DNA from: Isurus oxyrinchus
Lineage: Eukaryota
DNA: 64,000 nt
Direction of reading: 5' to 3'
Assembly (NCBI GenBank): GCA_026770705.1
Contig: JANJGN010000121.1
Location: 1,364,001 to 1,428,000 of the forward strand
Position 1 is the first letter of the stretch. Each line of letters opens with the position of its first letter. Below the pieces are notes generated by a model. It was not told the origin of the DNA. It saw only the letters and a list, made by a program, of their open reading frames with translations, and searched no databases. The position numbers were made by a program, and so were the translations under genes. This document shows positions 29,135-63,285 of this stretch, piece after piece.

Positions 29135-29180
29135 ATGGGAGAGGTCGGTCTGATATTGATCTTCATCAGCTTGCTGCAAG
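29135..29180 (+). CDS. Gene 2 signal peptide exon (acceptor at 29120)
   Basis: aagATGg Kozak; MGEVGLILIFISLLQG|gtacaa; phase 1. Confidence 0.85.
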
Positions 29181-32100: not shown

Positions 32101-35100
32101 GGTCTTGTATAGCTTAATATAGAACACCAGTAAAACTGGGAAATAAGAGTCCTGGTCCAAACTGGTCTTGTATAGAATAATATAGAACACCAGTAAAACT
32201 GGGAAATAAGAGTCCTGGTCTGAGCTGTTTTTTTGCTTCTGGGTGGAGAGGAGATTGAGCAGAATGGGTCCAGGGATGAGGGATTTTAGCTACAAGGTTG
32301 GGTTGGAGAAGCTGGGGTTGTTCTCCTTGGAGCAAAGGAGATTGAGGGGGGATCTGATCGAGGTGTACAAGATGATGATGGGTTTAGATAAGGTAGACAA
32401 AGAGAAGCTGTTGCCATTAGCTGATGGGACAAGGACTGGGGGACACAGATTGAAGGTTGTGGGAAGAGGGGGGATGTGAGGAGGAACTTTTTTACACAGC
32501 GAGTGGTAATGAGCTGGAAATCGCTGCCTACGAGGATGGTGGAAGTGGAGACGATGGGCGATTTCAAAATGAAATTGGACGGACACTTGAGGGAAATAAA
32601 TTCGCAGGGATACGGGGATAGAGGAGGGGGAATGGGACTGATTGGATTGGTCTACAGAGTGACAGCATGGACTCGATGGGCTGAATGGCCTCCTTCTGTG
32701 TTCTGAGTGTCTGTGACCCTATTGAAAAATCAAAGGACAAATCAAATCTCTTTTCTACTTGTCTGTTAACATCTGGAACTTTCTATTACAGATGTTCCAG
32801 ATAAGCCAGTTATTGTGCTCCTGAAGGATTTACAGGAGGGCACTCCTGCACATATCATCTGTAAATGCCTCGACACCTGCCCTGATAACCACCCCAATCT
32901 AACCTGGAGTGAATTGCTGACTTCCTCGGTCAGCACCATCACAGAGAACGGTGGTGAGGTTTCTGCTCTACTGACCTTTAACCCTTCGTTCAAGCATCAT
33001 GGACGAACTCTCCGCTGTACCTGTGACTACCCTCAAACCAGCCATCGAGTGGTCAACTCAGTTACTCTGAGTGTAAAGTGTAAGTATTGGTTAGAACATC
33101 CTGCTTGTGATGGAGGGGGAGTCAGTCTCCTATTAAATCAGGCATTGGAGAAGGTGCAAGTGGGATTGACATGGATGATCTCCGAACTGAGAGGTTATAA
33201 CTAACAGGAAAGACTGAACAAGCTGGTATTCTTGTCTCTAGAAAAGAGAAGGCTGAGGGGGTGACCTGATCGAGGTCCTTAAAATGATGAAACGGTTTCG
33301 ATAGGGTAGATGTAGAGAAGATGTTTCCACTTGTTGGAGCGAGGCCAGAACTAGGATCCATCAATATAAGATAATCATTAATAAATCCAGTGGGGAATTC
33401 AGGAGAAACTTCTTTACCCAGAGAGTGGGGAGAATGTGGAAGTCGCTCCCACAGGGAGTGGTAAAGGTGAATAGTATCGATGTATTTAAGGGATAAACAC
33501 ATGAGGGAGAAAGTAAGAAAAGGTTATGGGGATGGGGTGAGATAGCCACTTGTAGACTCGCTGTAATTCTGTGTGACATCATCTGCTGGTGAGGAACACA
33601 GTGCAGTTTGTACAGGTGCTAGTGTTGGAGCTGTATCCAGTCCATGATTCAAAACAGACCCTATCCCAATCTGGATGTTACACCTCATCAGTTCACTCTT
33701 TTTTTCATTCTTTTCTGGGATGTGGCCATTACTGGCTGGGGCCAGCATTTATCACCCATTCCTAATTGTCCCTTTGGAAGGTGGTGGTGAGCTGACTTCT
33801 GGGACTGCTGCACAGCATGTAGTGAAGGTGCACCAAAAGTGCTTCCTGGAGAGTGTTCTAGGATTTTGACCCAGAAACAATGAAGTAACAGTGAAATCGT
33901 TCCAAGTCAGGATGGTGTGTGGCTTGGAGGGGAACTTACAGGTGGTGATGTTCCCATGTATCTGCTGCCCTTGTCCTTATAGGTTTCAGAGGTCATGCGT
34001 TGGAAGGTGCTGTCTTAAGAGCCTTGGTGAGTTGCTGCAGTGCATCTTGTAGATGGTACACATTGCTGATAATGTGCGTCATTGGTGGAGGGAGTGAATG
34101 TTGAAGATGGTGGTTGGGATGCCGATCAATTGGGCTTTGTCCTGGATGGTGTCGAGTTTCTTGGGTGTGTTGGAGCAGCACTCATCCTGGCAACTGGAGA
34201 GAATTCCATCACACTCCTGACTTTAGCTCAGTGTTTAATGTGTTGATAATTTTGTATTTGAAAGATTCTCCTCACAACACGTCTGTCAGGCTGACACGGG
34301 AAAAAGGAAAGATGATTTCTCTAAGTTGTTCCAGTGATGGGAATCCAGCAGTCCACAATTTCACCTGGTTTAAGATCCCCCAAGGCAAGGTGACAAATCT
34401 GGTGCTCACTGGTCAAACTATTACAGTTCCTTATGGATTCGATGAGGAAATCTCCTACTACTGTGAAGCAACAAGTATCCTGGGCAGTTCCCAGTCTCTG
34501 CCCATTAAAATTCCCACTGAATGTGAGTACTTTTTTTATTCATACATGCGATGAAGGTGTCACTGGCTAGACCAACATTTATTGCCCATCCCAAATTATA
34601 CTGGAACAGAGAGGCTTAGTGGGCCATTTCAGAGGATATTGAGGAGTCAACCACGTTGCTGTGGGTCTGGAGTCACATGTAAGGCCAGACCAGGTAAGGA
34701 CAGCAGATTTACCTCCCTAAAGGACATTAGTGAACCAGATGGGGTTTTAACGACAATTGGCAATGTTTTCATGGTCAACAATAGACTTTCAATTACAGAT
34801 TCTCATTGAATTGGTTGGAAAGTGGACATTTGAACACTATGGCCACAATTTGTCCACAATTATCTGTTGCCAGCCAATCAGCACCCTCTTCTCATGCAGT
34901 ATAATTTGTTATCCCTTTGAGATTTGGTAATCTTGCAATTCTGTCCTGATGAGTGAAAGATGAAAAGCTTTGACAGAATGTCTCCTTTTTCACCAATGCT
35001 CAGGTTCTGTCCTGCCAAGTGACTGTAAACATCGTCTTCTGTAAATCAAAATCCTGAATACACTCGTAAATGACTAACATATCATTCCTGGTACACAAAT

Positions 35101-38100
35101 CAGAGAAAGTTAGTATGCAGGTGCAGCAAGTGGTTAGGAAGGCAAATGGAACATTGGTGTTTATTGCAAGGGAGCTTGAGTGTAAAAGTAGGGACACATG
35201 TAACAACTGTACAGGCTATTGGTGAGACTGCATCACGAGTACTGTGTACAGTCTTGGCTTCTGACATAGAAAAGATGTGCCGAATGTGCAGCTGTAGACT
35301 ACCTGTAATTCTGTGTAACATTACCTGCTGGTGATGAATACAGTGCAGTTTGTACATGTGCTAGTGTTGGAGCTGTATCCAGTCCATGATTATATAAAGA
35401 GACTATTCAAATCTAGACTTTAAACCTCATGAGTTTGCCCATATTTAGTTCATTCACAGGATGTGGGAGCTGCTGATATGGGCGACATTAATTGCCCATC
35501 CCTAATAACCCCTTGTCCTGACCTGCTGCAGTCCACATGCTGTACGTATATCCACAGTGCTGTTAGGGAGGGAGTTCCAGGATTTTGACCCAGCGAAAGT
35601 GAAGGAACGGCCGATATATTTCCAATTCAAGATGGTGAGAGGCTTGGTGGGGAACTTGCAGGTGGCGTTGTTCCCATTTTCCTGCTGCCCTTGTTCTTCT
35701 AGGTGTTAGGGATTGGAAGGTGCTGTTCAAGGAGCCTAGGTGTGCTGTTACATTGCATCTTGTAGACGGTACACACTGCTACCACTGTGCATTCATGGTG
35801 GAGGGAGTGAATGTTGAAGATGGTGGGTGGGATGCCGTTCAAGTGGGCTGCTTTGTCCTGGATGGTGTCCAGCTTCATGAGTGTTGTTGGAGCTGCACTC
35901 ATCCCGGCAAATGGAGAGTGTTCCATCACACTCCTGACTTTAGCTCAGTGGTTAATGTGTTGATAATTTTGTATTTGAAAGATTCTCCTCACAACACGTC
36001 TGTCAGGCTGACACGGGAAAAAGGAAAGGTGATTTCTCTAAGTTGTTCCAGTGACGGGAATCCAGCAGTCCACAATTTCACCTGGTTTAAGATCTCCCAA
36101 GGAAAGGTGACGAATCTGGTGCTCGCTGGTCAAACTATTACAGTTCCTTATGGATTCGATGAGGAAATTTCCTACTACTGTGAAGCAACAAGTATCCTGG
36201 GCAGTTCCCAGTCTCTGCCCATTAGAATTCCCACTGAATGTGAGTACTTTTTTTATTCGTTCATGGGATGAAGATCTCACTGGCTAGACCAACATTTATT
36301 GCCCATCCCAAATTACCCTGGAACTGAAAGGCTTGCTGGGCCATTTCAGAGGTCATTGAAGAGTCAACCACATCTCTGTGGGTCTGGACCTGCATGCAGG
36401 CCAGACCAGGTAAGGACGGCAGATTTTCCTCCCTAAAGGACATTAGTGACCCTGATGGGTTTTTAATGACAATCGGTAATGTTTTCATGGTCATCGTTAG
36501 AAATTCAATTCCAGGTCCTAATTGAATTGGTTGGCAAGTGGACATTTGACACTTTATCCACAATTTGCCCTCAATTATCTGCTTTCCAGGCAATCAGCAC
36601 CACCTCCTCATGCAATCTCAATTGTTGTTCCCTTTGAGATTTGGTATTCTTGCAATTCTGTCCTGATGAGTGAAAAATGAAAAGCTTTGACAGAATGTCT
36701 CCTTTCTCACCAACGCTCAAATTTTTTACTGCCAAGTGACTATAAATATCTTCTTCTGTAAATTCTCCTGAATGCTCTCCCAATTGACTAATATATAATT
36801 TCTGGTACATGAAACATAGAAGGTTCGTATGCAGGTGCAGCAAGTGTTTAGGAAGGCAAATGGAATGTTGGTGTTTATTGCAAGGGAGATTAAGTAAAAG
36901 TATTAGGGATGTAGGGTGGAGGTGTACAGGTTCTTTTTGAGACTGCATCAGGAGTACTGTGTATAGTCTTGGCTTCTGACATAGAAAAGATGGGCTGAAT
37001 GCGCAGTTGTAGACTACCTGTAATACTGTGTAACATTATCTGCTGGTGAGGAATACAGTGCAGTTTGTACTTGTGCTAGTGTTGGAGCTGTATCCAGTCC
37101 ATGATTATATAAAGAGACTATTCAAATCTAGATTTTAAACCTCATGAGTTTGCCCATATTTAATTCATTTGATGATATGGGCAACATTTATTAGCCATCC
37201 TTAATTACCCCATGAGCCACTGTATTCAACTGCTGCAGTCCATGTGCTGTAGGTACACCCACAGCAATGTTAGGGAGGGAGTTCCAGGATTTTGACCCAG
37301 TGACAGTGAAGGAATGGCGATAGATTTCCAAGTCAGGATGGTGAGTGGCTTGCAGGGGATCTTGCAGGTGGCATTGTTCCTACCTATCTGCTCCCCTTGT
37401 CCTACTTGATGTTAGGGTTTGGAAGGTGCTGTTCAAGGAGCCTTGGTGAGCTGTTGCAGTGCATCTTGTAGATGGTACACACTGCTGCCACTGTGCACCA
37501 GGGAGTGAATGTTGACTATGGTGGGTGGGGTACCGTTCAAGTGGGATGCTTTGTCCTGGATGGTGTCGAGCTTCCTGAGTGTTGCTGGAGCCGCACTCAT
37601 CCCGGCAACTGGAGAGTTTTCCATCACACTCCTGACTTTAGTTCAGTGGTTAATGTGTTGATAATTTTGGATTTGAAAGATTCTCCTCATAACACGTCTG
37701 TCAGGATGACACTGGAAAAAGGAAAGATGATTTCTCTAAGTTGTTCCAGTGACGGGAATCCACCAATCCACAATTTCACCTGGTTTAAGAGCTCCCAAGG
37801 AAAAGTGATGAATTTGGTGCTCGCTGGTCAAACTATTACAGTTCCTTCTGGATTCGATGAGGAAATCTCCTACTACTGTGAAGCAACAAGTATCCTGGGC
37901 AGTTCCCAGTCTCTGCCCATTAGAACTCCCACAGAATGTGAGTAATTTTTTTATTCGTTCATGGGATGGAGGTGTCACTGACTAGACCAACATTTATTGC
38001 CCATCCCAAGTTACCCTGGAACAGAGTGGCTTGGTGGGCCATTTCAGAGGGTATTGAAGAATCAACCACATTGCTGCAGTCACAGGTACGCCAGAGCAGG

Positions 38101-41100
38101 TAAGGACAGCAGATTTCCCTCCCTAAAGGACATTAGTGACCAAGATGGGGTTTTAACGACAATCAGCACTGTTTTCATGGTCATCATTAGACTTTCAATT
38201 CCAGATTCTAATTGAATTGGTTGGCAAGTGGACATTTGACCACTTTGGCCACAATTGGTCCACAATTATCTGTTGCCAGCTAATCAGCACCCTCTTCTCA
38301 TGCAGTATCAATTGTTGTTTCCTTTGAGATTTGGTATTCTGGCAATTCTGTCCTGATGAGTGAAAGATGAAAAGCTTTGACAGAATGTCTCCTTTCTCAC
38401 CAATGCTCAGGTTCTGTGCTGCCAAGTGATTGTAAACATCATCTTCTGTAAATCAGAATCCTGAATACTCTCTCCAATGACTAACACATCATTCCTGGTA
38501 CACGAACCAGAGAAAGTTAGTATGCAGGTGCAGCAAGTGGTTAGGAAGGCAAATGGAACGTTGCTGTTTATTGTAAGGGAGCTCGCGTGTAAAAGTAGGG
38601 ACGCATGTTACAACTGTACAGGCTCTTGGTGAGTCTGCATCACGAGTACTGTGTACAGTCTTTGATTCTGACATAGAAAAGATGGGCCAAATGTGCAGCT
38701 GAAGGCTACCTGTAATACTGGGTAATGTTATCTGCTGGTGAGGAATACAGTGCAGTTTCTACTTGTGCTAGTGTTGGAGCTGTATCCAGTCCATGATTAT
38801 ATAAAGAGACTATTCAAATCTCGATTTTACACCTCATGAGTTTGCCCATATTTAATTCATTCACAGGATGTGGGAGCTGCTGATATGGGTAACATTTATT
38901 GCCTATCCTTAATTACCCCTTGTCCTGACCTGCTGCAGTCCATGTGCTGTACGTATACCCACAGTGCTGTTAGGGAAGGGGTTCCAGGATTTTGACCCAG
39001 CGATAGTGAAGGAACGGCCGATACATTTCCAATTCAGGATGGTGAGAGGCTTGGCGGGGAACTTGCAGGTGGCATTGTTCCCATGTATCTGCTGCCCTTG
39101 TTCTTCTGGTATTAAGGAATGGAAGGTGCTGTTCAAGGAGCCTTGGGGAGCTGTTGCAGTGCATCTTGTAGATGGTACACACTGGACATTCATGGTGGAG
39201 AGAGTGAATGTTGTAGATTGTGGGTGGGATGACGTTCAAGTGGGCTGTTTGTCCTGGATGGTGTCGAGCTTCCTGAGTGTTGCTGGAGCCGCACTCATCC
39301 AGGCAACTGGAGAGTGTTCCATCACACTCCTGACTTTAACTCAGTTATTAATGTGTTGATAATTTTGTATTTGAAAGATTCTCCTCACAACACGTCTGTC
39401 AGGATGACACTGGAAAAAGGAAAGATGATTTCTCTAAGTTGTTCCAGTGAAGGGAATGCAGTAGTCCACAATTTCACCTGGTTTAAAATCTCACAAAGAA
39501 AAGTGACGAATCTGGCACTCGCTGGTCAAACTATTACAGTTCCTTATGGATTTGAAGAGCAAATCTCCTACTACTGTGAAGCAACAAGCATCCTGGGCAG
39601 TTCCCAGTCTCTGCCCATTAGAATTCCCTCTGAATGTGAGTACTTTTCTTCATTTGTTCATGGGATGGAGGTGTCACTGGCTAGACCAACATTTATTGCC
39701 CATCCCAAATTACCCTGGAACTGAATGGCTTGCTGGGCCATTACAGAGTGTATTGAAGAGTCAACCACATCTCTGTGGGTCTGGACTTGCATGTAGGCCA
39801 GACCAGGTAAGGACAGCAAATTTCCCTCCCTAAAGAACATTAGTGACCCAGATAGGTTTTTAACGACAATCGGTAATGTTTTCATGGTCATCGTTAGAAT
39901 GTCAATTCCAGATTCTCATTGAATTGGTTGGCAAGTGGGCATTTGACACTTTATCCACAATTTGTCCACAATTATCTGCTTGCCAGCTAATCAGCACATT
40001 CTCCTCATGCAGTATCAATTGTTGTTCCCTTTCAGATTTGGTATTCTTGCAATTCTGATGAGTGAAAGATGAAAAGCTTTGACAGAATGTCTCCTTTCTC
40101 ACCAATGCTCAGGTTCTGTGCTGCCAAGTGACTATAAACATCGTCTTCTGTAAATCAGAATCCTGAATACTCTCTCCAATGACTAACACATCATTCCTGG
40201 TACATGAATCATAGAAAGTTAGTATGCAGGTGCAGCAAGGTGTTAGGAAGGCAAATGGAACGTTGGTGTTTATTGTAAGCAAGCTTGGGTGTAAAAGTAG
40301 GGATGCATGTTACAACTCTATAGGCTCTTGGTGAGACTGCATCAGGAGTACTGTGTACAGTCTTGGCTTCTGACATAGAAAAGATGGGCCGAATGCGCAG
40401 CTGTAGACTACTTGTAATTCTGTGTAACATTATCTGCAGGTGAGGAATACAGTGCAGTCTGTACATGTGCTAGTGTTGGATCTGTATCCAGTCCATAATT
40501 ATATAAAGAGACTATTCAATTCTAGATTTTAAACCACATGAGTTTGCCCATATTAAATTCATTTGCTGATATGGGCAACATTTATTGCCCATCCCTAATC
40601 ACTCCATGTGCTGTAGGTACACCCACAGCAATGTTAGGCAGGGAGTTCCAGGATTATGACCCAGTGACAGTGAAGGAAATGACGATAGATTTCCAACTCA
40701 GGATGGTGTGTGGATTGGAGGGGAACTTGCAGGTGGTTGTGTTCCCATGAACAGATGCCCTTGTCCTTCTAGATGTTAGAGGTGATAGGTTTGGAAGGTG
40801 CTTTTCAAGGAGCCTTGGTGAGCTGTTGCAGTGCATCTTGCAGATGGTACACACTGCTGCTACTGTGCATTCAAGGTGGAGGGAGTGAATGTTGAAGATG
40901 GTGGGTGGGATGCCAATCAAGTGGGCTGCTTTGTCCTGGATGGTGTCGAGCTTCATGAGTGTTGTTGGAGCTGCACTCATCCCGGCAACTGGAGAGTGTT
41001 CCATCACACTCCTGACTTTAGCTCATTGGTTAATGTATTGATAATTTTGTATTTGAAAGATTCTCCTCGCAATACGTCTGTCAGGATGACATGGGAAAAA

Positions 41101-44100
41101 GGAAAGATGATTTCTCTCAGTTGCTCCAGTGACGGGAATCCAGCAGTCCACAATTTCACCTGGTTTAAGATCTCCCAAGGAAAGGTCATTAATCTGACAC
41201 TCACTGGTCAAACTATTATGGTTCCTGATGGAGTCGATGAGGAAATCTCCTACTACTGTGAAGCAACAAGTATCCTGGGCAGTTCCAAGTCTCTGCCCAT
41301 TAGAACTCCCACAGAATGTGAGTAATTTTTTTATTTGTTCATGGGATGAAGGTCTCACTGGCGAGACCAACATTTATTGCCCATCCCAAATTACCCTGGA
41401 ACAGAGTAGCTTGCTGTCCATTTCAGAGGGTTTTGAGGAATCAACCTCTTTGCTGTGGGTCTGGAGTCACATGTACACCAGACCAGGTAAGGATGGCAGA
41501 TTTCCCCCCCTAAAGGACATTAGTGACCCAGATGGGGTTTTAGCGACAATCAGCAATGTTTCCATGGTCAAAGTTAGACTTTCAATTCCAGATTCTAATT
41601 GAATTGGTTGGCAAGTGGACATTTGACACTTGGGCCACAATTTGTCCACAATTATCTGCTTGCCAGCCAATCAGCACATTCTTCTCATGCAGTATTGTTG
41701 TTCCCTTTGAGATTTGGTATTCTTGCAATTCTGTCCTGATGAGTGAAAGATGAAAAGCTTTGACAGAATGTCTCCTTTCACACCAATACTCAGTGCCGGA
41801 AAAGGATGAATGATCTCCTCCGTTCCACCAGCGTAAGTCACCCTTTTCATCACTCCTAACTCACACACTCACAAACACATCACACACCCACAGGGCCCTC
41901 ACTCACTGCCAGCGCAAGAGATATCACCATTCACTCTCTCACTCACACCGTCATTGTCCACATCCCATCCGTAGGACCACTCACCACCCACACAGGTCAG
42001 GCATACTTATCATCTGGCCTGGCAGGCATCCTGATACACTCTCCCCATCTCTATCCATGCAGGACAAACTGGCTCACAACAGGAGGGGAAGGTCACAGAC
42101 AGGTGGAGAGATGTCGGAGATCAAAGCTCTGACAGAATTGGAAAACAGAGTCATCCAGCTGGCCGGCAATGACCGGGATCGGTCCTGTGCTGACAGTGAG
42201 TTCAGCGCTGCTTTCCCAAGTGAGGATCCAGAAGTGCAACATCCATCAAACAACCATGCTGTGAGTGATGTGTCCTCTTTCACAGGCCACTGCCATGCAC
42301 TAATTAGCTCCCAATGCTTTCACAGACACATCTGGGAAGCAGCAGACAGAGTCCACGACCCAGAACCTCCAAGCAAGCTCCGAAGAAACCTCTGAAGAGG
42401 AATCTGAAGGCACCCTCCCTGAACTCCCCTCACAGCGCTCATCCTCACCCTCCATCAGCGCAGAGACACACACCTCAGTGGGACCTAGCTTTAGAGTAGC
42501 CTCTGGTGAGCACATCGCACTGTTTGATTCACAGCAGGCTGAGGCAGGGACCTACCAGGTCCCCGGCACTCGGAGGACTGCTGGAGGCCAGAACATTGCT
42601 GAGTCCGAGTCGGATGATGAGCTTCTGACTCAGTAATGTCACAGTTGCTGGAGCTGCAAAGGCAAGCTGGGGAACATCAGGAAGGGATGTCCGCTGCACT
42701 CCTCAGATTGCAAGGCATGATGGAGGAGTCCGTCTGCCTTCAGGTTGAGGTGATAGTGCCAGCATGGCAACGCACTGAGGTCAACACTGGCAGGATGACG
42801 GCCGCCATGGAGACCTTGGTCCAGGACGTTGCTCACGTACTGCTACACGGGTTTAACCCCATCTCTAATGTCATAGTTGGCCTCCTACAGTGTTCAGGTG
42901 AGAGGGATGCTGGGCAGCTCAATCTCACTCTACCTACACCCCATCTCTCATCCCCATTGATGTCCTCCTCATCAGAGGAGACCTCCAGCTCCTCCATCTC
43001 CTCCTCAGCCAGCTCCTCTCCCAGTTGCAGCGCCTGGTTGTAAAGGGCGCAGCAGACAATGACGATGTGCGATACCCTCTGCGGACTGTATTGCTGGGCT
43101 CCACTAGACTGGTCCAGGCACCGCAACCACATCTTCAGCATCCCGGGTCTGTGCTACCAAATTACGAGTTGCTGCCTGAGCCTCATTATAGCGTCGCTCT
43201 GCTGCAGTCTGAGGCCTCTGCACGCGTGTCATCAGCCACAACCACTGTAGTCCTTGTCCCCAAGGAGCCAACCCTGCAGCCTCTGTGGACCCTGGAAAAC
43301 TGCAGGGATCTGAGAGTGACTCAGGATGTAGGCAATGTGCGCACTCCCTGTAAACCGTGTGCATACCACAGGATGTGTTGCTGCTGGTCACATACCAACT
43401 GCATATTCGATGAGTGGAAACCCTTGTGGTTGATGAAGTCCACTGGGTGTAGCGATGGAGACCTGAGCGCCACATGAGTGCAGTCAATCGTACCCTGCAC
43501 CTATGGGAATCCCGAGATCAGGGCAAATCGAAAGGCCCTTGCATCCTGGCTGTCCGGGTCCCGGGCGAAATGCATAAAGTTGTTGCCATGGAGAAGATGC
43601 ATCCGGGACCTCATGGATGTATTTGTGGGTGGAGAATTGTGATATCCCACAGAGGTCGCCTGTGGAGCCCTGAAAGGAGACACTGGCAGAGAAATTGAGC
43701 ACCACGGTCACTGTCACAGGCACTGGCAGTGGATGCCCTCTATGTTCCCTTGGATCCAAGTCCTGCAGTAAGTGGCAGATGTGAGCCAACAGGTCCCTAG
43801 ACATGCACAGACATCAGTGACTCTGGTTCTCAGTCATCTGCAGGAATGACAGGCGGTGTCTATAGACTCTGGGTGTCGCTAGGCGCTGACCAGCCACGGC
43901 TCACTGTCGCTCCTCGACAGCGTATGCGAGACCTCCACTGCCCCTTCTTCATGAGGTTGCTGTTCCTGCCTTTGTGCGGCCAGGAGCCTCAGTCACTCTC
44001 TCCTCCGTCTTCTAAAGTCTCCGTGGACCATCAGGCACGCAGCTAGGTCACCAGGGTCCATCATCCCGACATGGCCCTCCTGCACCATGAAAAAGAGAGA

Positions 44101-47524: not shown

Positions 47525-47717
47525 GTGTGAAACAGGGAGCGGGGCTGTGGGGTGTGTGCAGCCAACATGGTCAAATAGTAATGAACAGAAATATGATGTT
47601 GCTCAATTTTTTTTATCAGTTCTGAGTGAGCTTTCTGAATGCTGCACCTTTTTCCATGCTGTAAAAGATTGTGAGAAGCTTATGAATTATGTATAATTTT
47701 ACATCTGTTAATACAAG

Positions 47718-49800: not shown

Positions 49801-52800
49801 AGAAGCAATTAAAATGCCCTGACATTTCTGTACATTTTTATCAAATTAAATACGTTCTCTAGTGAATAATTCCATTCTCCAAGGCACCACTTCCTGTTGT
49901 CACATGCCCTTCTGATTATTTAAATTCCTGTGTCATTGGTAATGGAACATTCCCATGTAAACATGTCACACTGTAATTACAGCCTCCTGCCAGTGGTGGT
50001 GCTCTAGTGTCCTAGTTTTGCTTCTCAGAGACTGGAGGAGATCTATACGTTGTGTTTACAATATGAGTAACACTCAGGGGTGACCAGGGGGATTCTTTCG
50101 GCCAAGTTTATGATGTTGCTAAGATACAATGGCCCCATGGGATTTTTCCTACTGCGTTTACAAGGTTGAATCGAAGAGATTTTTGAAGTGTCTGGCACAG
50201 TTTTATAAAGGTCCCCGCACTGCGTTCAGGTCTGGGGCCTGCAGCTTAGGAATGATATATTGTCCATGGAGAGGATGCTGTACCGATTCACCAGAATGAT
50301 CCCGGGGCTGAAAGGGTTAAATCCCGAGGACAGGTTGCACAGACCAGGCTTGTGTTCCCTCGAGTCTCGAAGATTAAGGGGTGATCTAATCGAGGGGTTT
50401 ATGATGATTAAAGGCTTTGATATGGGCAATAGAGAGAACGCAGCAGCTCATTGAACTTTGTCCAGCGCTGATGGGCTTGTATTGCACTCACCACAGCCGC
50501 TACTTGAACCCAGGCCCTCTTGGTTGCTGCAGGATCATTACGGTGACCAGCCGAATACAGGGCTGCTCTCCTCTTCTGGATCTCTTCCACCAAAACAGGA
50601 AGGTCCTATCAGGAGAGCACGGAGCAGCTGGACCCAGCCATTTCCCAGCGTCCCCGCTGTGTGACATTCTATCAACGGAAAGGTAAGGTGAAAAGGGTCA
50701 CGGTCCATTCAGATTACAAAGCTCCCGTTGACTTTTGTGTGCTTGTCCACACGAACCATTTTCACCGCATCACCAGTGATTACTGGGAAGGTTTGGTGGA
50801 GAGACCGGCTCTGCATGAATGCTCGGTGCCAGGCATGTTGTGGCTGTGACTCTGTGGGAACACGCGGTGCTCCGTCACCACCCACAGCCCTACCAGTTTC
50901 CTCCCTCTGACTCACGCTGTTATGTCGTGACAGTGAGCAGCTGCGAGGGACCTGGGCAAGGGTCAACAGTGTGGGCACCTGCTGATGGACGGGTGGCAAG
51001 GGGGCAAATGGATGTGATAATGAGCATGGCACTGTCCATCATTCGTCCACCCTCTGAGTCTTTGGCAGCTAACCACATGACTGCAGAATATCTGTACCAG
51101 CGAGTGGTGGTGGGACAATGCCAACTCCGAGTCTGTGTCTTGTGAATCCATCTCATGTTTTCACTTAAGCCCACAGAAACCCACAGGAAACCCACAGAGT
51201 GACAGTCACTGGGAAAGACACTCGCTCCTTGTGGCTTCACGTTTTAACCATATCCTGTCTGAGTGTCTCAAATGTTAAACACACCAGCCATATTCAGGGA
51301 GGTTTCACTCTGAGAANNNNNNNNNNNNNNNNNNNNNNNNNNNNNNNNNNNNNNNNNNNNNNNNNNNNNNNNNNNNNNNNNNNNNNNNNNNNNNNNNNNN
51401 NNNNNNNNNNNNNNNNNNNNNNNNNNNNNNNNNNNNNNNNNNNNNNNNNNNNNNNNNNNNNNNNNNNNNNNNNNNNNNNNNNNNNNNNNNNNNNNNNNNN
51501 NNNNNNNNNNNNNNNNNNNNNNNNNNNNNNNNNNNNNNNNNNNNNNNNNNNNNNNNNNNNNNNNNNNNNNNNNNNNNNNNNNNNNNNNNNNNNNNNNNNN
51601 NNNNNNNNNNNNNNNNNNNNNNNNNNNNNNNNNNNNNNNNNNNNNNNNNNNNNNNNNNNNNNNNNNNNNNNNNNNNNNNNNNNNNNNNNNNNNNNNNNNN
51701 NNNNNNNNNNNNNNNNNNNNNNNNNNNNNNNNNNNNNNNNNNNNNNNNNNNNNNTCTAGGTGTGTGTATGTGTGTGTGTGAGAGAGAGATTCTAGTGTAT
51801 GTGTGTGTGTATGTGTTTGTACATGTGTGTGTTTGTGTGTATGAGTGTGTGCCTGTATGTGTGTGTGTTTTTGTGCGTGTGTGTGTGTGTTTCTGGTTGT
51901 GTGTATGTGTGTGTGTGTGTTTGTGTGTTCGTGTGCAGTGTTTGTGTATGTTTATTTGTTGTATTTGTGTGTGTGTGTGTGTGTGTGCAGGTGTGTGTTT
52001 GTGCCTCTCTGTGAGACTGTGTGTATCTGACAGCAGGTCAGGCAGAAATAGTCCAGAATGCGCTGTGGTTTTGTAGCATTGAAACAATGACATGATCTAA
52101 ATGAGTGCTGCACCAAATAAAGACATGGAGTGACCACACCAAAAAACCACGTGACTTCCCCAGTTTCACATCTCCCTCAAACACAGAAAAACTGGGTTAA
52201 CACTGACCCTCCTCCCAGAGCCAGTTCACCTCGTGTCCGATGCAGTCAGGAGAGGAAGATCATCTCTCCTCCGATCCTGCTAAACTGAACATTTCCAGAA
52301 TTAGATCAGCTCCCTGAAGTGTCTCCAGTTAGACATTCATCTGACAGGATTGACTCTACAACCCTGGGGACTCATTCTCCTGTAAGTAAAACACTTGCTG
52401 CTCCTGTCAAATCTCTTCTGTACAGCATGGTCTCTGGATGTCCCAGAACACTTTACAGTTGAATTCACCCTTTTTTCGAAGTGTGGTTACTGTTGTAATG
52501 TAGGAAACGCAGCAGCCAATTAGCGCACAGCAAGCTCCCACAAACAGCAATGTGATCATCTGTTTTTAGTGATGTTGGTTGAGGGATAAATATTGGTGCC
52601 AGGACACCGGGGAGATCTCCCCCCTGCTCTTCCTCCAAATAGTGGCTGTGGGATCTTTCACACCCGCCCGAGAGGGCAGACGGGGGACTCGGTTTAGTGT
52701 CTAATATTGGACTAATCTCCAGGCGAGGTTGGCTGGATGGATTATTGACAAGGTCCATTCACCCTGTAAAGAGTTTCTCTGGTTTGAAATAGCTGATCAA

Positions 52801-53654: not shown

Positions 53655-53689
<35 letters not shown>

Positions 53690-54511
53690 TGTGTGAGAGA
53701 GAGAGAATGTGAGAAATTGTGTGTGAGACAGTGTGCATGTGAGAGAGTGAGAGTGTGTGTGTATTTGAGAGATGGAGCAACAGTGTGTATGTGAGAGAGT
53801 GTGTGTGAGAGAGAGGGTGTGTTTGAGAGAGAAAGAGAGAGTGTGCATGTTTGATAGAGTGTATGTGTGAGAGAGTGTGTGTGTGAGACAGTGTGTGTTT
53901 GAGAGTGTGTTTGAGAGTGTGTGAGAGAGCGTGTGCTTGAGAGAGAGGGTGTGTTTGAGAGAGAGTGTGTATGTGTTTGAGATAGAGAATGACTGTGCGA
54001 TGGAGTGTGTGTTTGAGAGAGAGAATGTGTGTGTGAGAAAGTGTGTTTGAGAGGGTGTGTGTGAGAGAGAGAGTGCCAGTGCGAGAGAGTGTGTGTTTGT
54101 GAGAGGGAGCGAGAATATGTGTGTGAGAGAGAGAGATAGAGCAGAAGACTGCGATAGAGAGAGATTGTGAGTGTTAGAGAGAGAATGTGTGTGTGTGTGA
54201 GAGAGAGATAGAGCAGAAGAGTGCGATAGATAGAGATTGTGAGGGCTAAACTCACTGAGAGAAAAATCTGGACACCCAGCACAGGGAGTGAGGGAACAAT
54301 GAATTTTTGCCGTGTTTGGTGAATCGGTTTGCGATGTCCCTTCTCAATCTCTCCTTCCTTGTCTTGACATTAGTTTATTCTCTGGGGCTGTTTAACTCCC
54401 TGAAAGGTGCCATTTAAACACAAGTTGTTGTTGTTTGAGGAAGAAACGCTGGGGACAATTTCTGAAAAAGTCTCTGTCTTTATCATTTTCCATTTAGATG
54501 AGGAACTGAAG

Positions 54512-54557
54512 ATGGGAGAGGTCGGTCTGATATTGATCTTCATCAGCTTGCTGCAAG
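54512..54557 (+). CDS. Gene 3 signal peptide exon
   Basis: Same peptide as 29135-29180. Confidence 0.85.
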
Positions 54558-57500: not shown

Positions 57501-60500
57501 GGAATGGGACTGATTGGATTGCTCTGCAGAGAGACAGCATGGACTCGATGGGCTGAATGGCCTCCTTCTGTGTTCTGAGTGTCTGTGACCCTATTGAAAA
57601 ATCATAGCACAAATCAAATCTCTCTTCTACTTGTCTGTTAACATCTGGAACTTTCTATTACAGATGTTCCAGATAAGCCAGTTATTGTGCTCCTGAAGGA
57701 TTTACAGGAGGGGACTCCTGCACATATCATCTGTAAATGCCTCTACACCTGCCCTGATAACCACCCCAATCTAACCTGGAGTGAATTGCTGACTTCCTCG
57801 GTCAGCAACATCACAGAGAACGGTGGCGTGGTTTCCGCTCTACTGACCTTTAACCCTTCGTTCAAGCATCATGGACGAACTCTCCGCTGTACCTGTGACT
57901 ACCCTCAAACCAGCCATCGAGTGGTCAACTCAGTTACTCTGAGTGTAAAGTGTAAGTATTGGTTAGAACATCCTGCTTGTGATGGAGAGGGAGTCGGTCT
58001 CCTATTAAATGAGGCATTGGAGAAGGTGCAAGTGGTATTGACAAGGACGATCCCAGAACTGAGAGGTTATAACTAACAGGAAAGACTGAACAAGCTGGGA
58101 TTCTTTCCTCTAGAAAAGAGAAGGCTGAGGGGGTGACCTGACTGAGGTCTTTAAAATGATGAAAGTGTTTCGATAGGGTAGATGTAGAGAAGATGTTTCC
58201 ACTTGTCGGAGTGAGGCCAGAACTAGGATCCATCGATATAAGATAATCACTAATAAACCAAAGGGGAATTCAGGAGAAACTTCTTTACCCAGAGAGTGGT
58301 GAGAATGTGGAACTCGCTCCCACAGCGAGTGGTCGAGGTGAATAGTATCGATGTATTTAAGGGGTGAGTTGGATAAACATATGAGGGCGAAAGCAAGAAA
58401 AGGTTATGGGGATGGGGTGAGATATCCACTCATAGACTCGCTGTAATTCTGTGTAACATCATCTGCTGGTGAGGAACACAGTGCAGTTTGTACAGGTGCT
58501 AGTGTTGGAGCTGTATCCAGTCCATAATTCAAAACAACCCTATCCCAATCTGAATGTTAAACCTCATCAGTTCACTCTTATTTTCATTCTTTTTTGGGAT
58601 GTGGCCATTACTGGCTGGGCCCAACATGATAAATGATAAACCGAATCCTAATTGTCCCTTAGGAAGGTGGTGGTGAGCTAACTTCTTGGACTGCTGCAGA
58701 GCAAGTAGTGAAGGTGCACCAAAAGTGCTTCCTGGAGAGCGTTCTAGGATTTTGACCTGGCAACAATGAAGTAACAGTGAAACTGTTCCAAGTCAGGCTG
58801 CTGTGTGGCTTGGAGGGGAACGTGCAGGTGGTGATGTTCCCATGTATCTGCTGCCCTTGTCCTTCAAGGTTTCAGAGATCATGAGTTTGGAAGGTGCTGT
58901 TCAAGGAGCCTTGCTGAGTTGCTGCAGTGCATCTTGTAGATGGTACACACACTGCTGCCACTGTGCTTTCATGGAGGAGGGAGTGAATATTGAAGATGTT
59001 GGGTGAGATGCCATTCAAGTGGGCTGCTTTGTCCTGGATGGTGTTGAGCTTCTTGAGTGTTGTTGGAGCCACACTCATCTAGGCAAGTGGAGAGTGTTCC
59101 ATCACACTCCTGACTTATCTTGTGTTTAATGTGTTGATAATTTTGTATTTGAAAGATTCTCCTCGCAAGACATCTGTCAGGATGACACTGGAAAAAGGAA
59201 AGATGATTTCTCTAAGTTGTTCCAGTGATGGGAATCCAGCAGTCCACAATTTCACCTGGTTTAAGATCTCCCAAGGCAAGGTGACAAATCTGGAGCTTGC
59301 TGGTCAAACTATTACAGTTCCTTACGGATTTGAAGAGGAAATCTCCTACTACTGTGAAGCAACAAGTATTCTGGGCAGTTCCCAGTCTCTGCCCATTAGA
59401 ATTCCCACTGAATGTGAGTAATTTTTTTATTCATTCATGGGATGGAGGTGTCACTGGCTAGACCAACATTTATTGCCCATCCCAAATTACCCTGGAACAG
59501 AGTGGCTTGCTGGGCCATTTCAGAAGTCATTGAAGAGTCAACCACATTGCTGTGGGTCTGGAGTCATATGTAGGCCAGACCAGGTAAGGACGGCAGATTT
59601 CCCTCCCTAAAGGACATTAGTGACCCAGATGGGGTTTTAACGACAATCGGCAATGTTTTCATGGTCATCATTAGACTTTCAATTCCAGATTCTAATTGAA
59701 TTGGTTGGCAAGTGGACATTTGACCACTTTGGCCACAATTGGTCCACAATTGTCTGTTTACCTGTCAATCAGCACCCTCTACTCATGCAGTATCAATTGT
59801 TGTTCCCTTTGAGATTTGGCATTCTTGCAATTCTGCCCTGATGTGTGAAAGATGAAAAGCTTTGACAGAATGTCTCCTTTCACACCAATGCTCAGGTTCT
59901 GTGCTGCCAAGTGACTGTAAACATCGTCTTCTGTAAATCAGAATCCTGAATACTCTCTTAAATGACTAACACATCATTCCTGGTACATGAATCGTAGAAA
60001 GTTAGTATGCAGGTGCAGCAAGGTGTTAGGAAGGCAAACCTGGAATGTTGGTGTTTATTGCAGAGCTTGAGTGTAAAAGTAGGGACGTATCATATTCTAC
60101 AACCGTACAGGCTCTTGGTGAGATTGCATCAAAAATACTGTGTACAGTCTTGGCTTCTGACATAGAAAAGATGGGCCAAATGTGCAGCTGAAGGCTACCT
60201 GTAATACTGTGTAACATTTTCTGCTGGTGAGGAATACAGTGCAGTTTGTACTTCTGCTAGTGTTGGAGCTGTATCCAATCCATGATTATATAAAGAGACT
60301 ATTCAAATCTAGACTTTAAACCTCATGAGTTTGCCCATATTTAATTCATTCACAGGATGTGGGAGCTGCTGATATGGGCAACATTTATTGCCCATCCCTA
60401 ATTACCCTTTGTCCTGAACTGCTGCAGTCCATGTGCTGAACGTATACCCACAGTACTGATAGGGAGGGAGTTCCAGGATTTTGACCCAGCAATAGTGAAG

Positions 60501-62830
60501 GAATTGCGATAGATTTCCAAGTCAAGATGGTGAGTGGCATGGTGGGGAACTTGCAGGTGGCGTTGTTCACATTTTTCTCCTGCCCTTGTTCTCCTAGGTG
60601 TTAGGGTTTGGAAGTTGCTGTTAAAGGAGCCTTGGTAAGCAGTTGTAGTGCATCTTGTAGATGGTACACACTGCTGCCACTGTGCATTCATGGTGGAGGG
60701 AGTGAATGTTGAAAATGATGGGTGGGATGCCGCACAAGCGGGCTGCTTTGTCCTGGATGGTGTCGAGTTTCTTGAGTGTTGTTGGAGCCACACTCATCCA
60801 AGCAAGTGGAGAATATTCCATCACACTCCTGACTTTAGCTCAGTGGTTAATGTGTTGATAATTTTGTATTTGAAAGATTCTCCTCACAATACGTCTGTCA
60901 GAATGACACTGGAAAAAGGAAAGGTGATTTCTCTAAGTTGTTCCAGTGACGGGAATCCAACAGTCCACAATTTCACCTGGTTTAAGATCTCCCAAGGCAA
61001 GGTGACAAACCTGGATCTCGCTGGTCAAACTATTACAGTTCCTTATGGATTTGATGAGGAAATCTCCTACTACTGTGAAGCAACAAGTATCCTGGGCAGT
61101 TCCCAGTCTCTGTCCATTAGAATTCCCACTGAATGTGAGTACTTTTTTTATTCGTTCATGGGATGAAGATCTCACTGGCTAGACCAACATTTATTGCCCA
61201 TCCCAAATTACCCTTGAACTGAGTGGCTTGCTGGGCCATTTCAGAGGTCATTGAAGAGTCAACTACATCTCTGTGGGTCTGGAGTCACATGTAGGCCAGA
61301 CCAGGTAAGGATGGCAGATTTCCCTCCCTGAAGGACATTAGTGACCGAAATGGGTTTTTAACGACAATTGGCAATGATTTCAAGGTCATTGTAAGACTTT
61401 CAATTCCAGATTCTAATTGAATTGGTAGGCAAGTGGACATTTGACCACTTTGGCCACAATTTGTCCATAATTATCTGCTTGCCAGCCAATCAGCACATTC
61501 TCCTCATGCAGTATAAATTGTTGTTCCATTTGAGATTTGGTATTCTTGCAATTCTGTCCTGATGAGTGGAAGATGAAAAGCTTTGACAGAATGTCTCCTT
61601 TCTCACCATTGCTATGGTTTTCTTCTGCCAAGTGACAATAAATATTGTCTTCTGTAAATCAGAATCCTGAAAACCTTCTTAAATTACTGACACAACGTCC
61701 CTGGTGCAGCAAGTGCTTAGGAAGACAAATGAAACATCGGTGTTTATTGCAAGGGAGCTTGGCTGTAAAAGTAGGGATGTATACAATACTGCAACTGTAC
61801 AGGCTCTTGGTGAGACTGCATCAGCAGTACTGTGTACAGTCTTGGCTTCTGACATAGAAAAGATGGGCCGAGGGTGCAGCTGAAAGCTACCTGTAATTCA
61901 GTGTAACATAATCTGCTGGTGAGGAATATAGGGCAGTTTGTACATCTGCTAATGTTGGAGCTTTATCCAGTCCACGATTATATAGAGTCTATTCATATTT
62001 AGATTTTGAATCTCATGCGCTTGCTCATATTTAATTCATTCACAGGATGCAGGCGTTGCTGATCTCGGCAACATTTAGTGCCCGTCCCTAATTACCCATT
62101 GAGCCGTTGTCTTGAACGGCTGCAGACCATGTGCTGTAGGTACACAGACACTGCTTTTAGGGAGGGAGTTCCAGGATTTTGACACAGCAACAGTGAAGGA
62201 ATGGCAATAGATTTCCAAGTCAGGATGGTGAGTGACTTGGAGTGGATCTTGCAGGTGGCGTTGCTCCCTTCTTATTGCTGTCCTTGTCCTTCTAGATGTT
62301 AGGGTTTAGAAGGTGCTGTTCAAGGAGCCTTGGTGAGCTGTTGCAGTGCATCTTGTAGATGGTACACACTGCTGCCACTGTGCACTCACAGTGGAGGGAG
62401 TGAATGTTGAAGATGATGGGTGGGATGCCGCTCAAGTGGGCTGCTTTGTCCTGGATGGTGTTGAGCTTCTTGAGTGTTGTTGGAGCTGCACTCATCCAGG
62501 CAAATGAAGAGTATTCCATCACACTCCTGACGAGCTCAGTGATTAATGTGTTGATAATTTTGTATTTGAAAGATTCTCCTCACAACACGTCTGTCAGGAT
62601 GACACTGGAAAAAGGAAAGGTGATATCTCTAAGTTGTTCCAGTGACGGGAATCCTGCAGTCCACAATTTCACCTGGTTTAAAATCTCCCAAGGAAAGGTG
62701 ATGAATCTGGCGCTCGCTGGTCAAACTATTACAGTTCCTTATGGATTCGAAGAGGAAATCTCCTACTACTGTGAAGCAACAAGTATCCTTGGCAGTTCCC
62801 AATCTCTGCCCATTAGAATTCCCACAGGAT
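54512..62830 (+). CDS. Gene 3 (3'-partial): recent paralog of gene 2, Siglec/CD22-like
   Basis: Exons 54512-54557, 55378-55734, 57664-57951, 59156-59413, 60877-61134, 62573-62830; the repeat unit continues to the window end. Confidence 0.87.
55378..55734 (+). CDS. Gene 3 V-set exon
   Basis: 357 nt; 6 aa differences from gene 2. Confidence 0.92.
57664..57951 (+). CDS. Gene 3 domain 2 exon
   Basis: 288 nt; 3 aa differences from gene 2. Confidence 0.9.
59156..59413 (+). CDS. Gene 3 Ig C2 exon B1
   Basis: 258 nt, open frame. Confidence 0.88.
59830..59871 (+). ncRNA. Hammerhead motif copy 6 (core mutant CTGATGT)
   Basis: A9 to T and a stem I mismatch. Confidence 0.5.
60877..61134 (+). CDS. Gene 3 Ig C2 exon B2
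   Basis: 258 nt, open frame. Confidence 0.88.
61551..61592 (+). ncRNA. Hammerhead motif copy 7
   Basis: Core and stems intact; loop II variant. Confidence 0.68.
62573..62830 (+). CDS. Gene 3 Ig C2 exon B3
   Basis: 258 nt, open frame. Confidence 0.88.
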
Positions 62831-63243
62831 GTGAGTATATTTTTTATTCTTCATGGGATGGAGATGACACTGGCTAGACCAACATTTATTGACCATTCCA
62901 AATTACCCTTGAACTGAATGGCTTACTGGCCATTTCAGAGGGTATTCATGAGTCAACCACGTTGCTGTGAGTCTGGAGTCACATGTAGGCCAGACCAGGT
63001 AAGAACGGCAGATTTCCCTCCCTAAAGGACATTAGTGACCCAGACGGGGTTTTAATGACAATCGGTAATGTTTTCATGGTCTTCGTTAGACTTTCAATTC
63101 CAGATTCTCATTGAATTGGTTGGCAAGTGGACATTTGACACTTGGGCCACAATTTGTCCACAATTATCTGCTTGCCAGCCAATCAGCACACTCTTCTCAT
63201 GCAGTATAAATTGTTGTTCCTTTTGAGATTTGGTATTCTTGCA

Positions 63244-63285
63244 ATTCTGTCCTGATGAGTGAAAGATGAAAACCTTTTACAGAAT
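63244..63285 (+). ncRNA. Hammerhead motif copy 8 (stem III palindrome and stem I mutated)
   Basis: GAAAaccttttacagaat. Confidence 0.5.

What the first reader, a model, noticed from the sequence alone, without database searches (positions are those of the whole stretch)
34938..63285. A sense-strand hammerhead ribozyme motif in every intron of the amplified Ig-B stalk (8 copies)
Seen: about 420-450 nt after each 258-nt exon lies attctgtc-CTGATGA-gtgaaagat-GAAA-agct-TT-gacagaat, at 34938, 36655, 38345, 40052, 41728, 59830, 61551 and 63244. It has the hammerhead core (CUGANGA...GAAA...UH), a perfect 8-bp stem I, a 2-bp stem II and a palindromic AAGCTT stem III. Stem I extends (gagat/gtctc) past a bulge whose TCTTGCA is complementary at 6 of 7 positions to the stem/loop II sequence TGAAAGA, a possible pseudoknot. 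Five copies keep core and stems; predicted cuts are after 34971, 36688, 38378, 41761 and 61584. Established: Penelope-like retroelements carry minimal type I hammerheads with palindromic stem III that cleave mainly as dimers. Inference: exon duplication placed several copies in cis in one pre-mRNA. They could dimerise and cut between Ig exons, affecting exon inclusion or transcript level, or releasing 1.7-kb single-exon RNAs. Caveat: the G-U pair at the base of stem II and the UUU cleavage triplet look like CpG decay and may make them slow or dead.
Basis: partly seen in the sequence, partly recalled or inferred. Interest (0 to 1): 0.85.

Follow-up and report, generated by a model that had tools for sequence, protein, structure and literature searches.

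The report
Transposon-derived hammerhead relic in array introns
Each copy of a duplicated 1.7-kb exon-plus-intron block in two neighbouring immune-receptor-like genes carries the same 42-letter hammerhead-ribozyme look-alike, which is most likely a decayed piece of a very abundant mobile element copied along passively, with no sign that it still cuts RNA.

Summary
Eight sense-strand copies of a 42-nt motif lie 408-417 nt after each 258-nt Ig exon. The motif has CUGAUGA, a 2-bp stem II, GAAA, a palindromic AAGCUU, U, and an 8-bp stem I. Five copies keep core and stems; three carry private, disabling lesions.

All eight descend from one ancestral occurrence, so this is one event, not eight. Contigs from DNA runs of two related organisms pile up on the motif-bearing 71-nt bin. 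Depth there is 10-45 times that of adjacent bins and about a thousand times that of unique bins. The motif therefore belongs to a high-copy dispersed repeat. Earlier unchecked notes report many Penelope-like hammerhead elements in this genome.

It fits the published Penelope minimal hammerhead only partly. Core, type I topology and palindromic stem III match. G10.1-C11.1, the long helix II and the extra nucleotide after A9 do not.

- No Rfam hammerhead model matches, even at E 10.
- There is no covariation; every change in a paired column breaks the pair.
- It is the least diverse intron window, but this is not significant after correction.
- Stem II is thermodynamically unfavourable and dimerisation is weak.

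Verdict: a passenger transposon relic. Activity is untested and unlikely. The assembly gap touches no copy.

The parts
34938..34979 (+). Copy c1 of the hammerhead-like motif (stem I to stem I). Core and stems are intact. H17 is at 34971.
36655..36696 (+). Copy c2. Core and stems are intact. One G-to-A change in loop II. H17 is at 36688.
38345..38386 (+). Copy c3. Core and stems are intact. H17 is at 38378. The upstream bulge has a T-to-G change.
40052..40088 (+). Copy c4. Broken by a 5-nt deletion that removes most of the 5' strand of stem I.
41728..41769 (+). Copy c5. Core and stems are intact. H17 is at 41761. It lies 24 nt before the end of array A, whose homology stops at 41793.
59830..59871 (+). 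Copy c6. Broken by A9 changed to U in the core and a C.A mismatch in stem I.
61551..61592 (+). Copy c7. Core and stems are intact. One A-to-G change in loop II. H17 is at 61584.
63244..63285 (+). Copy c8. Broken: the AAGCUU palindrome is lost (G to C) and G1.1 is changed to U. There is also a change in the outer stem extension.
33551..41793 (+). Tandem array A: about 4.8 units of about 1.70 kb. Each unit has one 258-nt Ig-like exon (starts 34265, 35982, 37680, 39378, 41060) and a transposon-rich intron.
58433..64000 (+). Tandem array B of the paralogous gene: three units in the window (exons start at 59156, 60877, 62573). The array runs off the window end.
34890..34995 (+). Approximate extent in unit c1 of the high-copy dispersed repeat that contains the motif. 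It is inferred from 71-nt depth bins, so its limits are uncertain by tens of bases.
   Evidence: table 2
51317..51754 (.). Assembly gap. It lies outside both arrays, at the spot homologous to the paralogue's own gap at 24301-24522.

Best explanation
A short piece of a very abundant dispersed repeat sat in the intron after an Ig-like exon of a Siglec/CD22-like gene. The repeat was most likely a Penelope-like retroelement or one of its non-autonomous derivatives, which carry minimal type I hammerhead motifs. The piece had already lost the canonical C11.1 and C17. The 1.7-kb exon-plus-intron block was then amplified in tandem, and the whole ~27-kb gene segment was duplicated. Both steps carried the motif along as a passenger. 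Since then the copies have decayed at close to the local neutral rate, and three of eight now carry disabling lesions. As an RNA the motif is at best a very poor, dimer-dependent ribozyme. Most likely it does nothing for the host transcript.

Shown: the eight copies, their common descent, their lesions, the repeat-level depth, and the absence of covariation or model match.

Inferred: the Penelope origin, the order of events, and the lack of activity.
For: (1) All eight copies lie at the same phase of one tandem unit, on the same strand, in two paralogous arrays.

(2) Contigs from DNA runs were laid at 80% likeness or more. They give a summed word depth of 328,908 (organism A) and 553,117 (organism B) in bin 34910-34980. 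The bins 34768-34838, 34839-34909 and 34981-35051 give 7,120-30,666 (A) and 5,583-147,988 (B). Unique intron and exon bins give about 0-1,400 (table 2). The motif-bearing stretch is therefore part of a high-copy repeat in two species. It is separated by a trough from the SINE-like repeat at 34555-34767.

(3) The rest of the intron is also a mosaic of high-copy repeats (table 2).

(4) The motif has the core, the type I order and the palindromic 15.2-16.2 described for PLE minimal hammerheads, which occur in thousands of copies in fish, coelacanth and frog genomes (PMC4209133).

(5) The scan holds 169 unchecked notes on hammerhead-bearing Penelope-like elements in this same genome.

(6) U11.1 and U17 are shared by all eight copies, whereas every lesion is private to one copy.

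(7) There is no covariation, and all five changed cells in paired columns break a pair.

(8) Lesion counts fit the non-CpG intron rate (P 0.06-0.2).

(9) No Rfam hammerhead model matches.

(10) Stem II is unfavourable: -5.3 kcal/mol with it against -6.0 with stem I alone. The gain on dimerisation is only about 5 kcal/mol.

(11) A characterised vertebrate PLE hammerhead cleaves only with the element's own protein and leaves no RNA-seq ends at its cut site (PMC11167929).
Against: - I could not read any other member of the repeat family. The Penelope assignment therefore rests on motif architecture and on unchecked notes.
- No reverse transcriptase or GIY-YIG remnant adjoins the motif.
- Three features typical of metazoan PLE hammerheads are missing: G10.1-C11.1, a long helix II, and an extra nucleotide after A9.
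- The 48-nt motif window is the single least diverse window of the intron (0.037 against a mean of 0.119). Five of eight intact copies is nominally more than expected (P 0.02-0.08). Weak purifying selection is therefore not excluded.
- The depth figures are sums over contigs, not copy numbers.
Confidence: 0.7

Rival explanations
1. Chance look-alike. The hammerhead-like arrangement arose by accident in an unrelated repeat or at an insertion junction. It never was a ribozyme. Amplification then made one accident look like eight.
For: - The lax descriptor is matched by random sequence: 23 hits with stem I of at least 5 bp and one with at least 8 bp in 40 Mb scanned on both strands. This extrapolates to a few high-quality accidents per multi-gigabase genome.
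- Stem II is only 2 bp with a G.U pair, which is what a chance match would give.
- No hammerhead covariance model matches.
- An 18-nt direct repeat covers part of stem I and the start of the core (34939-34956) and recurs at 35005-35022. It could be a duplication or target-site trace that built part of the motif.
Against: - No random hit combined an 8-bp stem I with a palindromic loop 3 in 40 Mb.
- The stretch is a high-copy repeat in two species.
- The scan's notes describe the genome as rich in Penelope hammerheads.
- The palindromic AAGCUU placed exactly between A14 and H17 is a specific PLE trait (PMC4209133).
Confidence: 0.2
2. Working intronic ribozymes. Neighbouring copies in one pre-mRNA pair through AAGCUU, form double hammerheads and cut between Ig exons. 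This would lower transcript yield, alter exon inclusion or release single-exon RNAs.
For: - The copies are on the sense strand and several lie in cis 1.7 kb apart.
- The core is complete in five copies.
- The motif window is the least diverse of the intron.
- There is precedent for conserved intronic type I hammerheads in amniote RECK, CTCL and DTNB (PMC6155905).
- PLE minimal hammerheads do cleave weakly as dimers (PMC4209133).
Against: - Three of eight copies carry private lethal lesions, and array B has one intact copy among three in the window.
- There are no compensatory changes.
- The conservation signal is not significant after correcting for about 24 windows, and the motif has no CpG sites.
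- The 2-bp G.U stem II is unfavourable, an alternative fold sequesters G8 and A9, and the gain on dimerisation of about 5 kcal/mol is weak.
- There are no loop-loop tertiary contacts.
- From my own knowledge, UUU is among the slower cleavage triplets.
- PLE hammerheads show low activity in vitro or need the element's protein (PMC4209133, PMC11167929).
- Hammerhead-bearing retrozymes are reported as depleted from introns (bioRxiv 10.64898/2026.07.22.740005).
Confidence: 0.06
3. An intron-encoded box C/D snoRNA. The UGAUGA would be a C box closed by a terminal stem.
For: The only Rfam matches are weak C/D-box models: snoZ169 at 15.6 bits against a gathering score of 55 (E 2.4-6), and SNORD38 at 14.2 bits.
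Against: - The scores are far below gathering.
- The alignment skips about half of each model.
- There is no CUGA D box before the 3' stem strand.
- The unit is 42 nt, too short for a C/D snoRNA.
- It lies about 1 kb from the next 3' splice site.
Confidence: 0.01

Closest known systems
Minimal hammerhead motifs (min-HHR) of metazoan Penelope-like elements (Cervera and de la Pena 2014, PMC4209133)
   Same: - Type I order.
- Full CUGANGA / GAAA / UH core.
- No real helix III; instead a palindromic 15.2-16.2 stretch that can pair only between two copies.
- Membership of a very abundant dispersed repeat, mostly seen as isolated fragments in fish genomes.
- Expected low intrinsic activity.
   Different: - Helix II is 2 bp rather than 6-8 bp.
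- Helix I is 8 bp (13 with the extension) rather than 4-5 bp.
- G10.1 pairs with U instead of C.
- There is no extra nucleotide between A9 and G10.1.
- No Penelope ORF or pLTR could be identified next to it.
Conserved intronic type I hammerheads of amniotes (HH9/HH10: RECK, CTCL, DTNB introns; PMC6155905)
   Same: Sense-strand hammerhead in an intron of a protein-coding gene, thought to derive from a retroelement.
   Different: Those have 4-bp helix II, loop-loop tertiary contacts, monomer activity and deep cross-species conservation, and they match Rfam models. This motif has none of these, and it decays copy by copy.
Dimer-dependent hammerheads of tandem repeats (newt satellite 2, non-LTR retrozymes; PMC7229834, PMC4209133)
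   Same: Repeated in tandem in one transcript, so that two motifs could form a double hammerhead through a palindromic stem III.
   Different: There the repeat unit is the mobile or satellite element itself (about 150-400 nt) and produces circular RNAs. Here the 1.7-kb repeat is a host exon-intron block, and the motif is a minor passenger.

Membership tests
Hammerhead ribozyme (general definition) | Conserved core C3 U4 G5 A6 N7 G8 A9 ... G12 A13 A14 ... A15.1-U16.1, H17 | tested here: met
   All core letters are present in seven of eight copies. c6 has A9 changed to U.
Hammerhead ribozyme (general definition) | Three helices around the core that can form | tested here: inconclusive
   Stem I is a perfect 8 bp. 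Stem II is only 2 bp with a G.U pair and is energetically unfavourable. Stem III has no loop and can form only between two molecules.
Hammerhead ribozyme (general definition) | Helices supported by covariation | tested here: not met
   0 of 18 pairs have a compensatory or one-sided standard change. Five cells break a pair. The eight copies are too alike to say much.
Hammerhead ribozyme (general definition) | Site-specific self-cleavage after H17 | not testable with these tools
   Only contigs, not raw reads, were available. No RNA ends could be mapped.
Rfam hammerhead families (Hammerhead_1, Hammerhead_3, Hammerhead_II, HH9, HH10) | Match to the covariance model at or near its gathering score | tested here: not met
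   No hit at gathering over 64 kb. No hammerhead family hit at E up to 10 on 301-nt and 121-nt stretches with lax filters.
Metazoan PLE minimal hammerhead (PMC4209133) | Type I order, no stable helix III, palindromic 15.2-16.2 / loop 3 | tested here: met
   AAGCUU lies directly between A14 and U17 in seven of eight copies.
Metazoan PLE minimal hammerhead (PMC4209133) | Highly conserved G10.1-C11.1 pair | tested here: not met
   G.U in all eight copies (pair 59-67).
Metazoan PLE minimal hammerhead (PMC4209133) | Unpaired nucleotide between A9 and 10.1; large helix II (6-8 bp); short helix I (4-5 bp) | tested here: not met
   Only nine nucleotides lie between A9 and G12, giving a 2-bp helix II. 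Helix I is 8 bp.
Metazoan PLE minimal hammerhead (PMC4209133) | Lies in the pLTR of a Penelope-like element or in a dispersed truncated copy of one | tested here: inconclusive
   A depth spike shows a high-copy dispersed repeat in two species. No other family member or Penelope ORF could be read. There is no other copy in the window.

The most novel reading that the evidence does not exclude
The tandem exon amplification accidentally created what dimer-dependent minimal hammerheads need: several copies in cis in one pre-mRNA. Adjacent intact copies might then pair and cut the nascent Siglec-like transcript. Array length and copy decay would tune receptor mRNA yield or release single-exon RNAs.
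Probability: 0.04. Interest if true: 0.75.

Novelty: new member of a known kind. Interest (0 to 1): 0.2.

Why it matters
If the motif were active, it would be a natural case of a host gene whose own exon duplications assemble a working multi-copy ribozyme in its introns. That would bear on the open question of what minimal Penelope hammerheads do in vivo.

As the evidence stands, it is an ordinary outcome. Fish-type genomes hold thousands of such motifs, some land in introns, and one was copied along with a duplicated exon.

Its practical value is as a caution. Tandem amplification turns one relic into an apparently recurrent 'cassette'. Depth of related contigs is a quick way to see that such a motif belongs to a dispersed repeat.

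Tried and rejected
- **Rfam.** Searches at gathering over the whole window and at E up to 10 on short stretches gave no hammerhead family. Only sub-threshold C/D snoRNA and miRNA noise appeared. The snoRNA reading was rejected.
- **Other motifs in the window.** A descriptor scan for other minimal hammerheads, including A6 variants with stem II of at least 3 bp, found none. No in-window reference for the genome's Penelope hammerheads could be obtained.
- **Other copies of the segment.** A sensitive BLAST of 34523-35060 against the window found matches outside the arrays only for the SINE-like head at 34523-34737.
- **Collection scans.** Exact-pattern scans of metagenome and viral contigs for the 25-nt core gave 0 hits, as expected for an animal repeat.
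- **Fold-back test.** I asked whether the motif lies in a palindromic double-hammerhead mini-element like those noted elsewhere in this genome. The arm-to-arm alignment score was only marginal (P 0.02-0.05 against shuffles). The 291-nt fold is no more stable than shuffles (z 0.63). This is unresolved and not claimed.
- **Apparent divergence jump.** One search showed a sharp rise in divergence just after the motif. It proved to be an artefact of copy c5, whose array homology ends at 41793. Without c5 the downstream intron is only a little more diverged than the upstream one.
- **Pseudoknot and extended stem I.** There is no covariation, private changes weaken both, and the extension is absent from the minimum-energy fold.
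- **RNA evidence.** Only assembled contigs were on offer, so ends, strand and level could not be read. One intron contig of a probable RNA run spans a predicted cut site, but it is 86% identical and so comes from another copy.
- **Papers not reached.** The paper by Lunse, Weinberg and Breaker on small PLE hammerhead dimers is not held. The supplement of PMC4209133 is not held either.
- **Protein search.** Only one exon was searched as protein, by reference.

Full report
**1. What is in the sequence**

A search for the 20-nt core-plus-stem-II string with up to three mismatches finds exactly eight matches, all on the + strand. They are at 34946, 36663, 38353, 40055, 41736, 59838, 61559 and 63252, against 0.02 expected from shuffles.

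The 258-nt exon recurs eight times, at 34265, 35982, 37680, 39378, 41060, 59156, 60877 and 62573, with 91-97% identity. It has AG/GT borders. It translates to an Ig-like domain: Pfam Ig_3 at E 1.3e-5, which is below Pfam's own cut-off. I searched this one exon by reference and joined no exons.

Each motif starts 408-417 nt after an exon end, on the coding strand.

The other three copies carry private lesions:
- c4 has a 5-nt deletion in stem I.
- c6 has A9 changed to U and a stem I mismatch.
- c8 has lost both the AAGCUU palindrome and G1.1.

**2. One event, not eight**

The copies sit at the same phase of a ~1.70-kb tandem unit. Array A spans 33551-41793 (about 4.8 units). Array B starts at 58433 and runs off the window. 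The two arrays belong to a ~27-kb segmental duplication whose flanks are 92-95% identical.

U11.1 and U17 are shared by all copies. These are the two departures from the best hammerhead letters, and both sit before a G, as expected for CpG decay. They therefore predate the amplification. Every disabling lesion is private to one copy and so came afterwards.

**3. The assembly gap**

The gap at 51317-51754 lies in the duplicated segment more than 7 kb upstream of array B. Its flanks are collinear with paralogue A, which has its own gap at the homologous place (24301-24522), beside GT-rich repeats. No motif copy or array unit is affected. Continuity across the gap is unproven. I did not fill it or look it up.

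**4. Chance**

A lax descriptor of this kind is matched by random sequence. In 40 Mb of second-order Markov sequence scanned on both strands I found 23 hits with stem I of at least 5 bp. One had at least 8 bp, and none combined that with a palindromic loop 3. Extrapolated to a multi-gigabase genome, a few accidents of this quality are possible. The motif alone does not prove a ribozyme origin.

**5. It belongs to a dispersed high-copy repeat**

Runs of two related organisms hold the stretch, and only assembled contigs were available. I laid them at 80% likeness or more on 34200-36300 (table 2). The table gives summed word depth per bin:

| Bin | Organism A DNA | Organism B DNA |
|---|---|---|
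| 34768-34838 | 7,120 | 5,583 |
| 34839-34909 | 30,666 | 147,988 |
| 34910-34980 (motif) | 328,908 | 553,117 |
| 34981-35051 | 24,352 | 12,525 |

- Unique intron and exon bins have depths of roughly 0-1,400.
- Single-copy contigs have depths of about 25-40 (table 8).
- The same peak appears in two probable RNA runs.
- The peak is separated by a trough from the SINE-like repeat at 34555-34767.
- Its height is similar to that of the next repeat fragment, at 35123-35193.

The depth figures are sums, not copy numbers, but the contrast is 10-45-fold with neighbouring bins. The motif-bearing ~100 nt is therefore a fragment of an abundant interspersed repeat. The intron as a whole is a mosaic of such repeats.

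The scan holds 169 unchecked first-reader notes on hammerhead-bearing Penelope-like elements in this genome. I treat these as a lead only. I could not read another member of the family. None lies in the window, and collection scans were blank.

**6. Comparison with the known family**

Cervera and de la Pena (PMC4209133) describe metazoan PLE minimal hammerheads as follows:
- They are type I motifs without a real helix III, with palindromic 15.2-16.2, so that only dimers can be active.
- They occur in thousands of copies in fish, coelacanth and frog genomes, mostly as isolated fragments.
- They show low activity in vitro.

Our motif shares all of that. The same authors list traits that emerged beyond their descriptor: a nucleotide between A9 and 10.1, a highly conserved G10.1-C11.1, and typically a 6-8-bp helix II with a 4-5-bp helix I. 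Our motif has none of these. It has nine nucleotides between A9 and G12, a 2-bp helix II closed by G.U, and an 8-bp helix I.

No Rfam hammerhead model matches, even at E 10 on 121-301-nt stretches. Those models were not built from PLE minimal motifs, so this is weak evidence.

**7. Would it work?**

- With nearest-neighbour energies, the hammerhead fold with stem II scores -5.3 kcal/mol, which is worse than stem I alone (-6.0).
- The minimum-energy monomer (-7.7) pairs G8, A9, G10.1 and U10.2 with the GCUU of stem III.
- The symmetric dimer gains only about 5 kcal/mol over two monomers.
- The 76-nt context is no more stable than shuffles (z 0.14).
- There are no loop-loop contacts.
- A characterised vertebrate PLE hammerhead (Anolis Poseidon) cleaves only when the element's protein is added. 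It leaves no RNA-seq ends at its site (PMC11167929).

**8. Selection?**

Across the eight units, the 48-nt motif window is the least diverse window of the 1.16-kb intron. Its pairwise diversity is 0.037 against a mean of 0.119. The runners-up are at 0.051-0.054. The exon is at 0.075.

The motif has no CpG sites. At the non-CpG intron rate, 15.2 changes are expected and 7 plus one deletion are seen (P 0.016-0.03). This does not survive correction for about 24 independent windows. Six lesions at structural or core positions against 9-11 expected gives P 0.06-0.2.

No pair shows a compensatory or even a one-sided standard change. All five altered cells break pairs. The proposed pseudoknot fares no better.

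An apparent jump in divergence right after the motif was an artefact of c5, whose array homology ends at 41793.

**9. RNA**

A probable RNA run of organism A covers the exon bins at summed depths of 765-2,900 and unique intron bins at 130-180. This is consistent with an expressed, spliced gene. Contigs cannot show ends or strand, so cleavage remains untested.

**10. Verdict**

The best reading (about 0.7) is a transposon-derived, Penelope-type minimal hammerhead relic carried along by exon-unit amplification and gene duplication, and now decaying. A chance look-alike within an unrelated repeat remains possible (about 0.2). A working cis-dimerising intronic ribozyme is unlikely (about 0.05).

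Known relatives are the PLE minimal hammerheads, the conserved intronic hammerheads of amniotes (PMC6155905) and the dimer-dependent hammerheads of tandem retrozymes. A 2026 preprint reports that such retrozymes are depleted from introns.

Noticed in passing
window 20127-33812 and 47160-58698: A ~27-kb segmental duplication (offset about 27,033; 92-95% identity) carries two paralogous Siglec-like genes. Each has its own exon array, and the array lengths differ. Both paralogues have an assembly gap at the same homologous position (24301-24522 and 51317-51754), next to GT-rich repeats.
   Followed up: partly
window 41793 and 33551: Array A ends 24 nt after the last motif copy, at phase 35003 of the unit. 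It begins at phase ~35293. About 290 nt of the internal units (35004-35292, including a LINE-like fragment) are therefore missing from the array's outer ends. This may mark the original duplication junction.
   Followed up: partly
window 34939-34956 and 35005-35022: An 18-nt direct repeat (83% identical, 66 nt apart) covers part of stem I and the start of the core. It could be chance, a small duplication or a trace of a target-site duplication. It is less clear in the other copies.
   Followed up: partly
window 34784-34830 and 34977-35053: Imperfect inverted repeats (21 nt at 76% and 16 nt at 81%) flank the motif. The flanked region is ~270 nt, similar in size to the palindromic double-hammerhead mini-elements noted elsewhere in this genome. 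The arm alignment is only marginal (P 0.02-0.05) and the fold is not unusually stable.
   Followed up: yes
window 34200-36300 (table 2): Almost the whole 1.4-kb intron is high-copy repeat: 34555-34767 (depth 1-3 million), 35052-35264, and 35478-35974 (up to 11 million). DNA-run contigs show zero depth over the exon bins while a probable RNA run covers them. This may be an effect of the tool's filter or of assembly collapse of the near-identical exons.
   Followed up: no
window 19482-19938, 26263-26561, 30490-31578, 46596-46905, 55867-56379: A 33-bp minisatellite (9-33 copies per array, 75-88% matches) recurs on both strands around and inside the genes.
   Followed up: no
window 42836-43141 (- strand): An ORF fragment gives a weak match to the C-terminal end of DDE_Tnp_4, a Harbinger-type transposase (E 0.095, below cut-off). 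It is probably a decayed DNA transposon in the intron after array A.
   Followed up: partly
window 34870-34905: CCAAT and TATAAT strings lie 40-75 nt upstream of the motif in most copies. Another reader noted the same pattern in the next window. They lie within or at the edge of the same high-copy repeat. They were not tested as a promoter.
   Followed up: no
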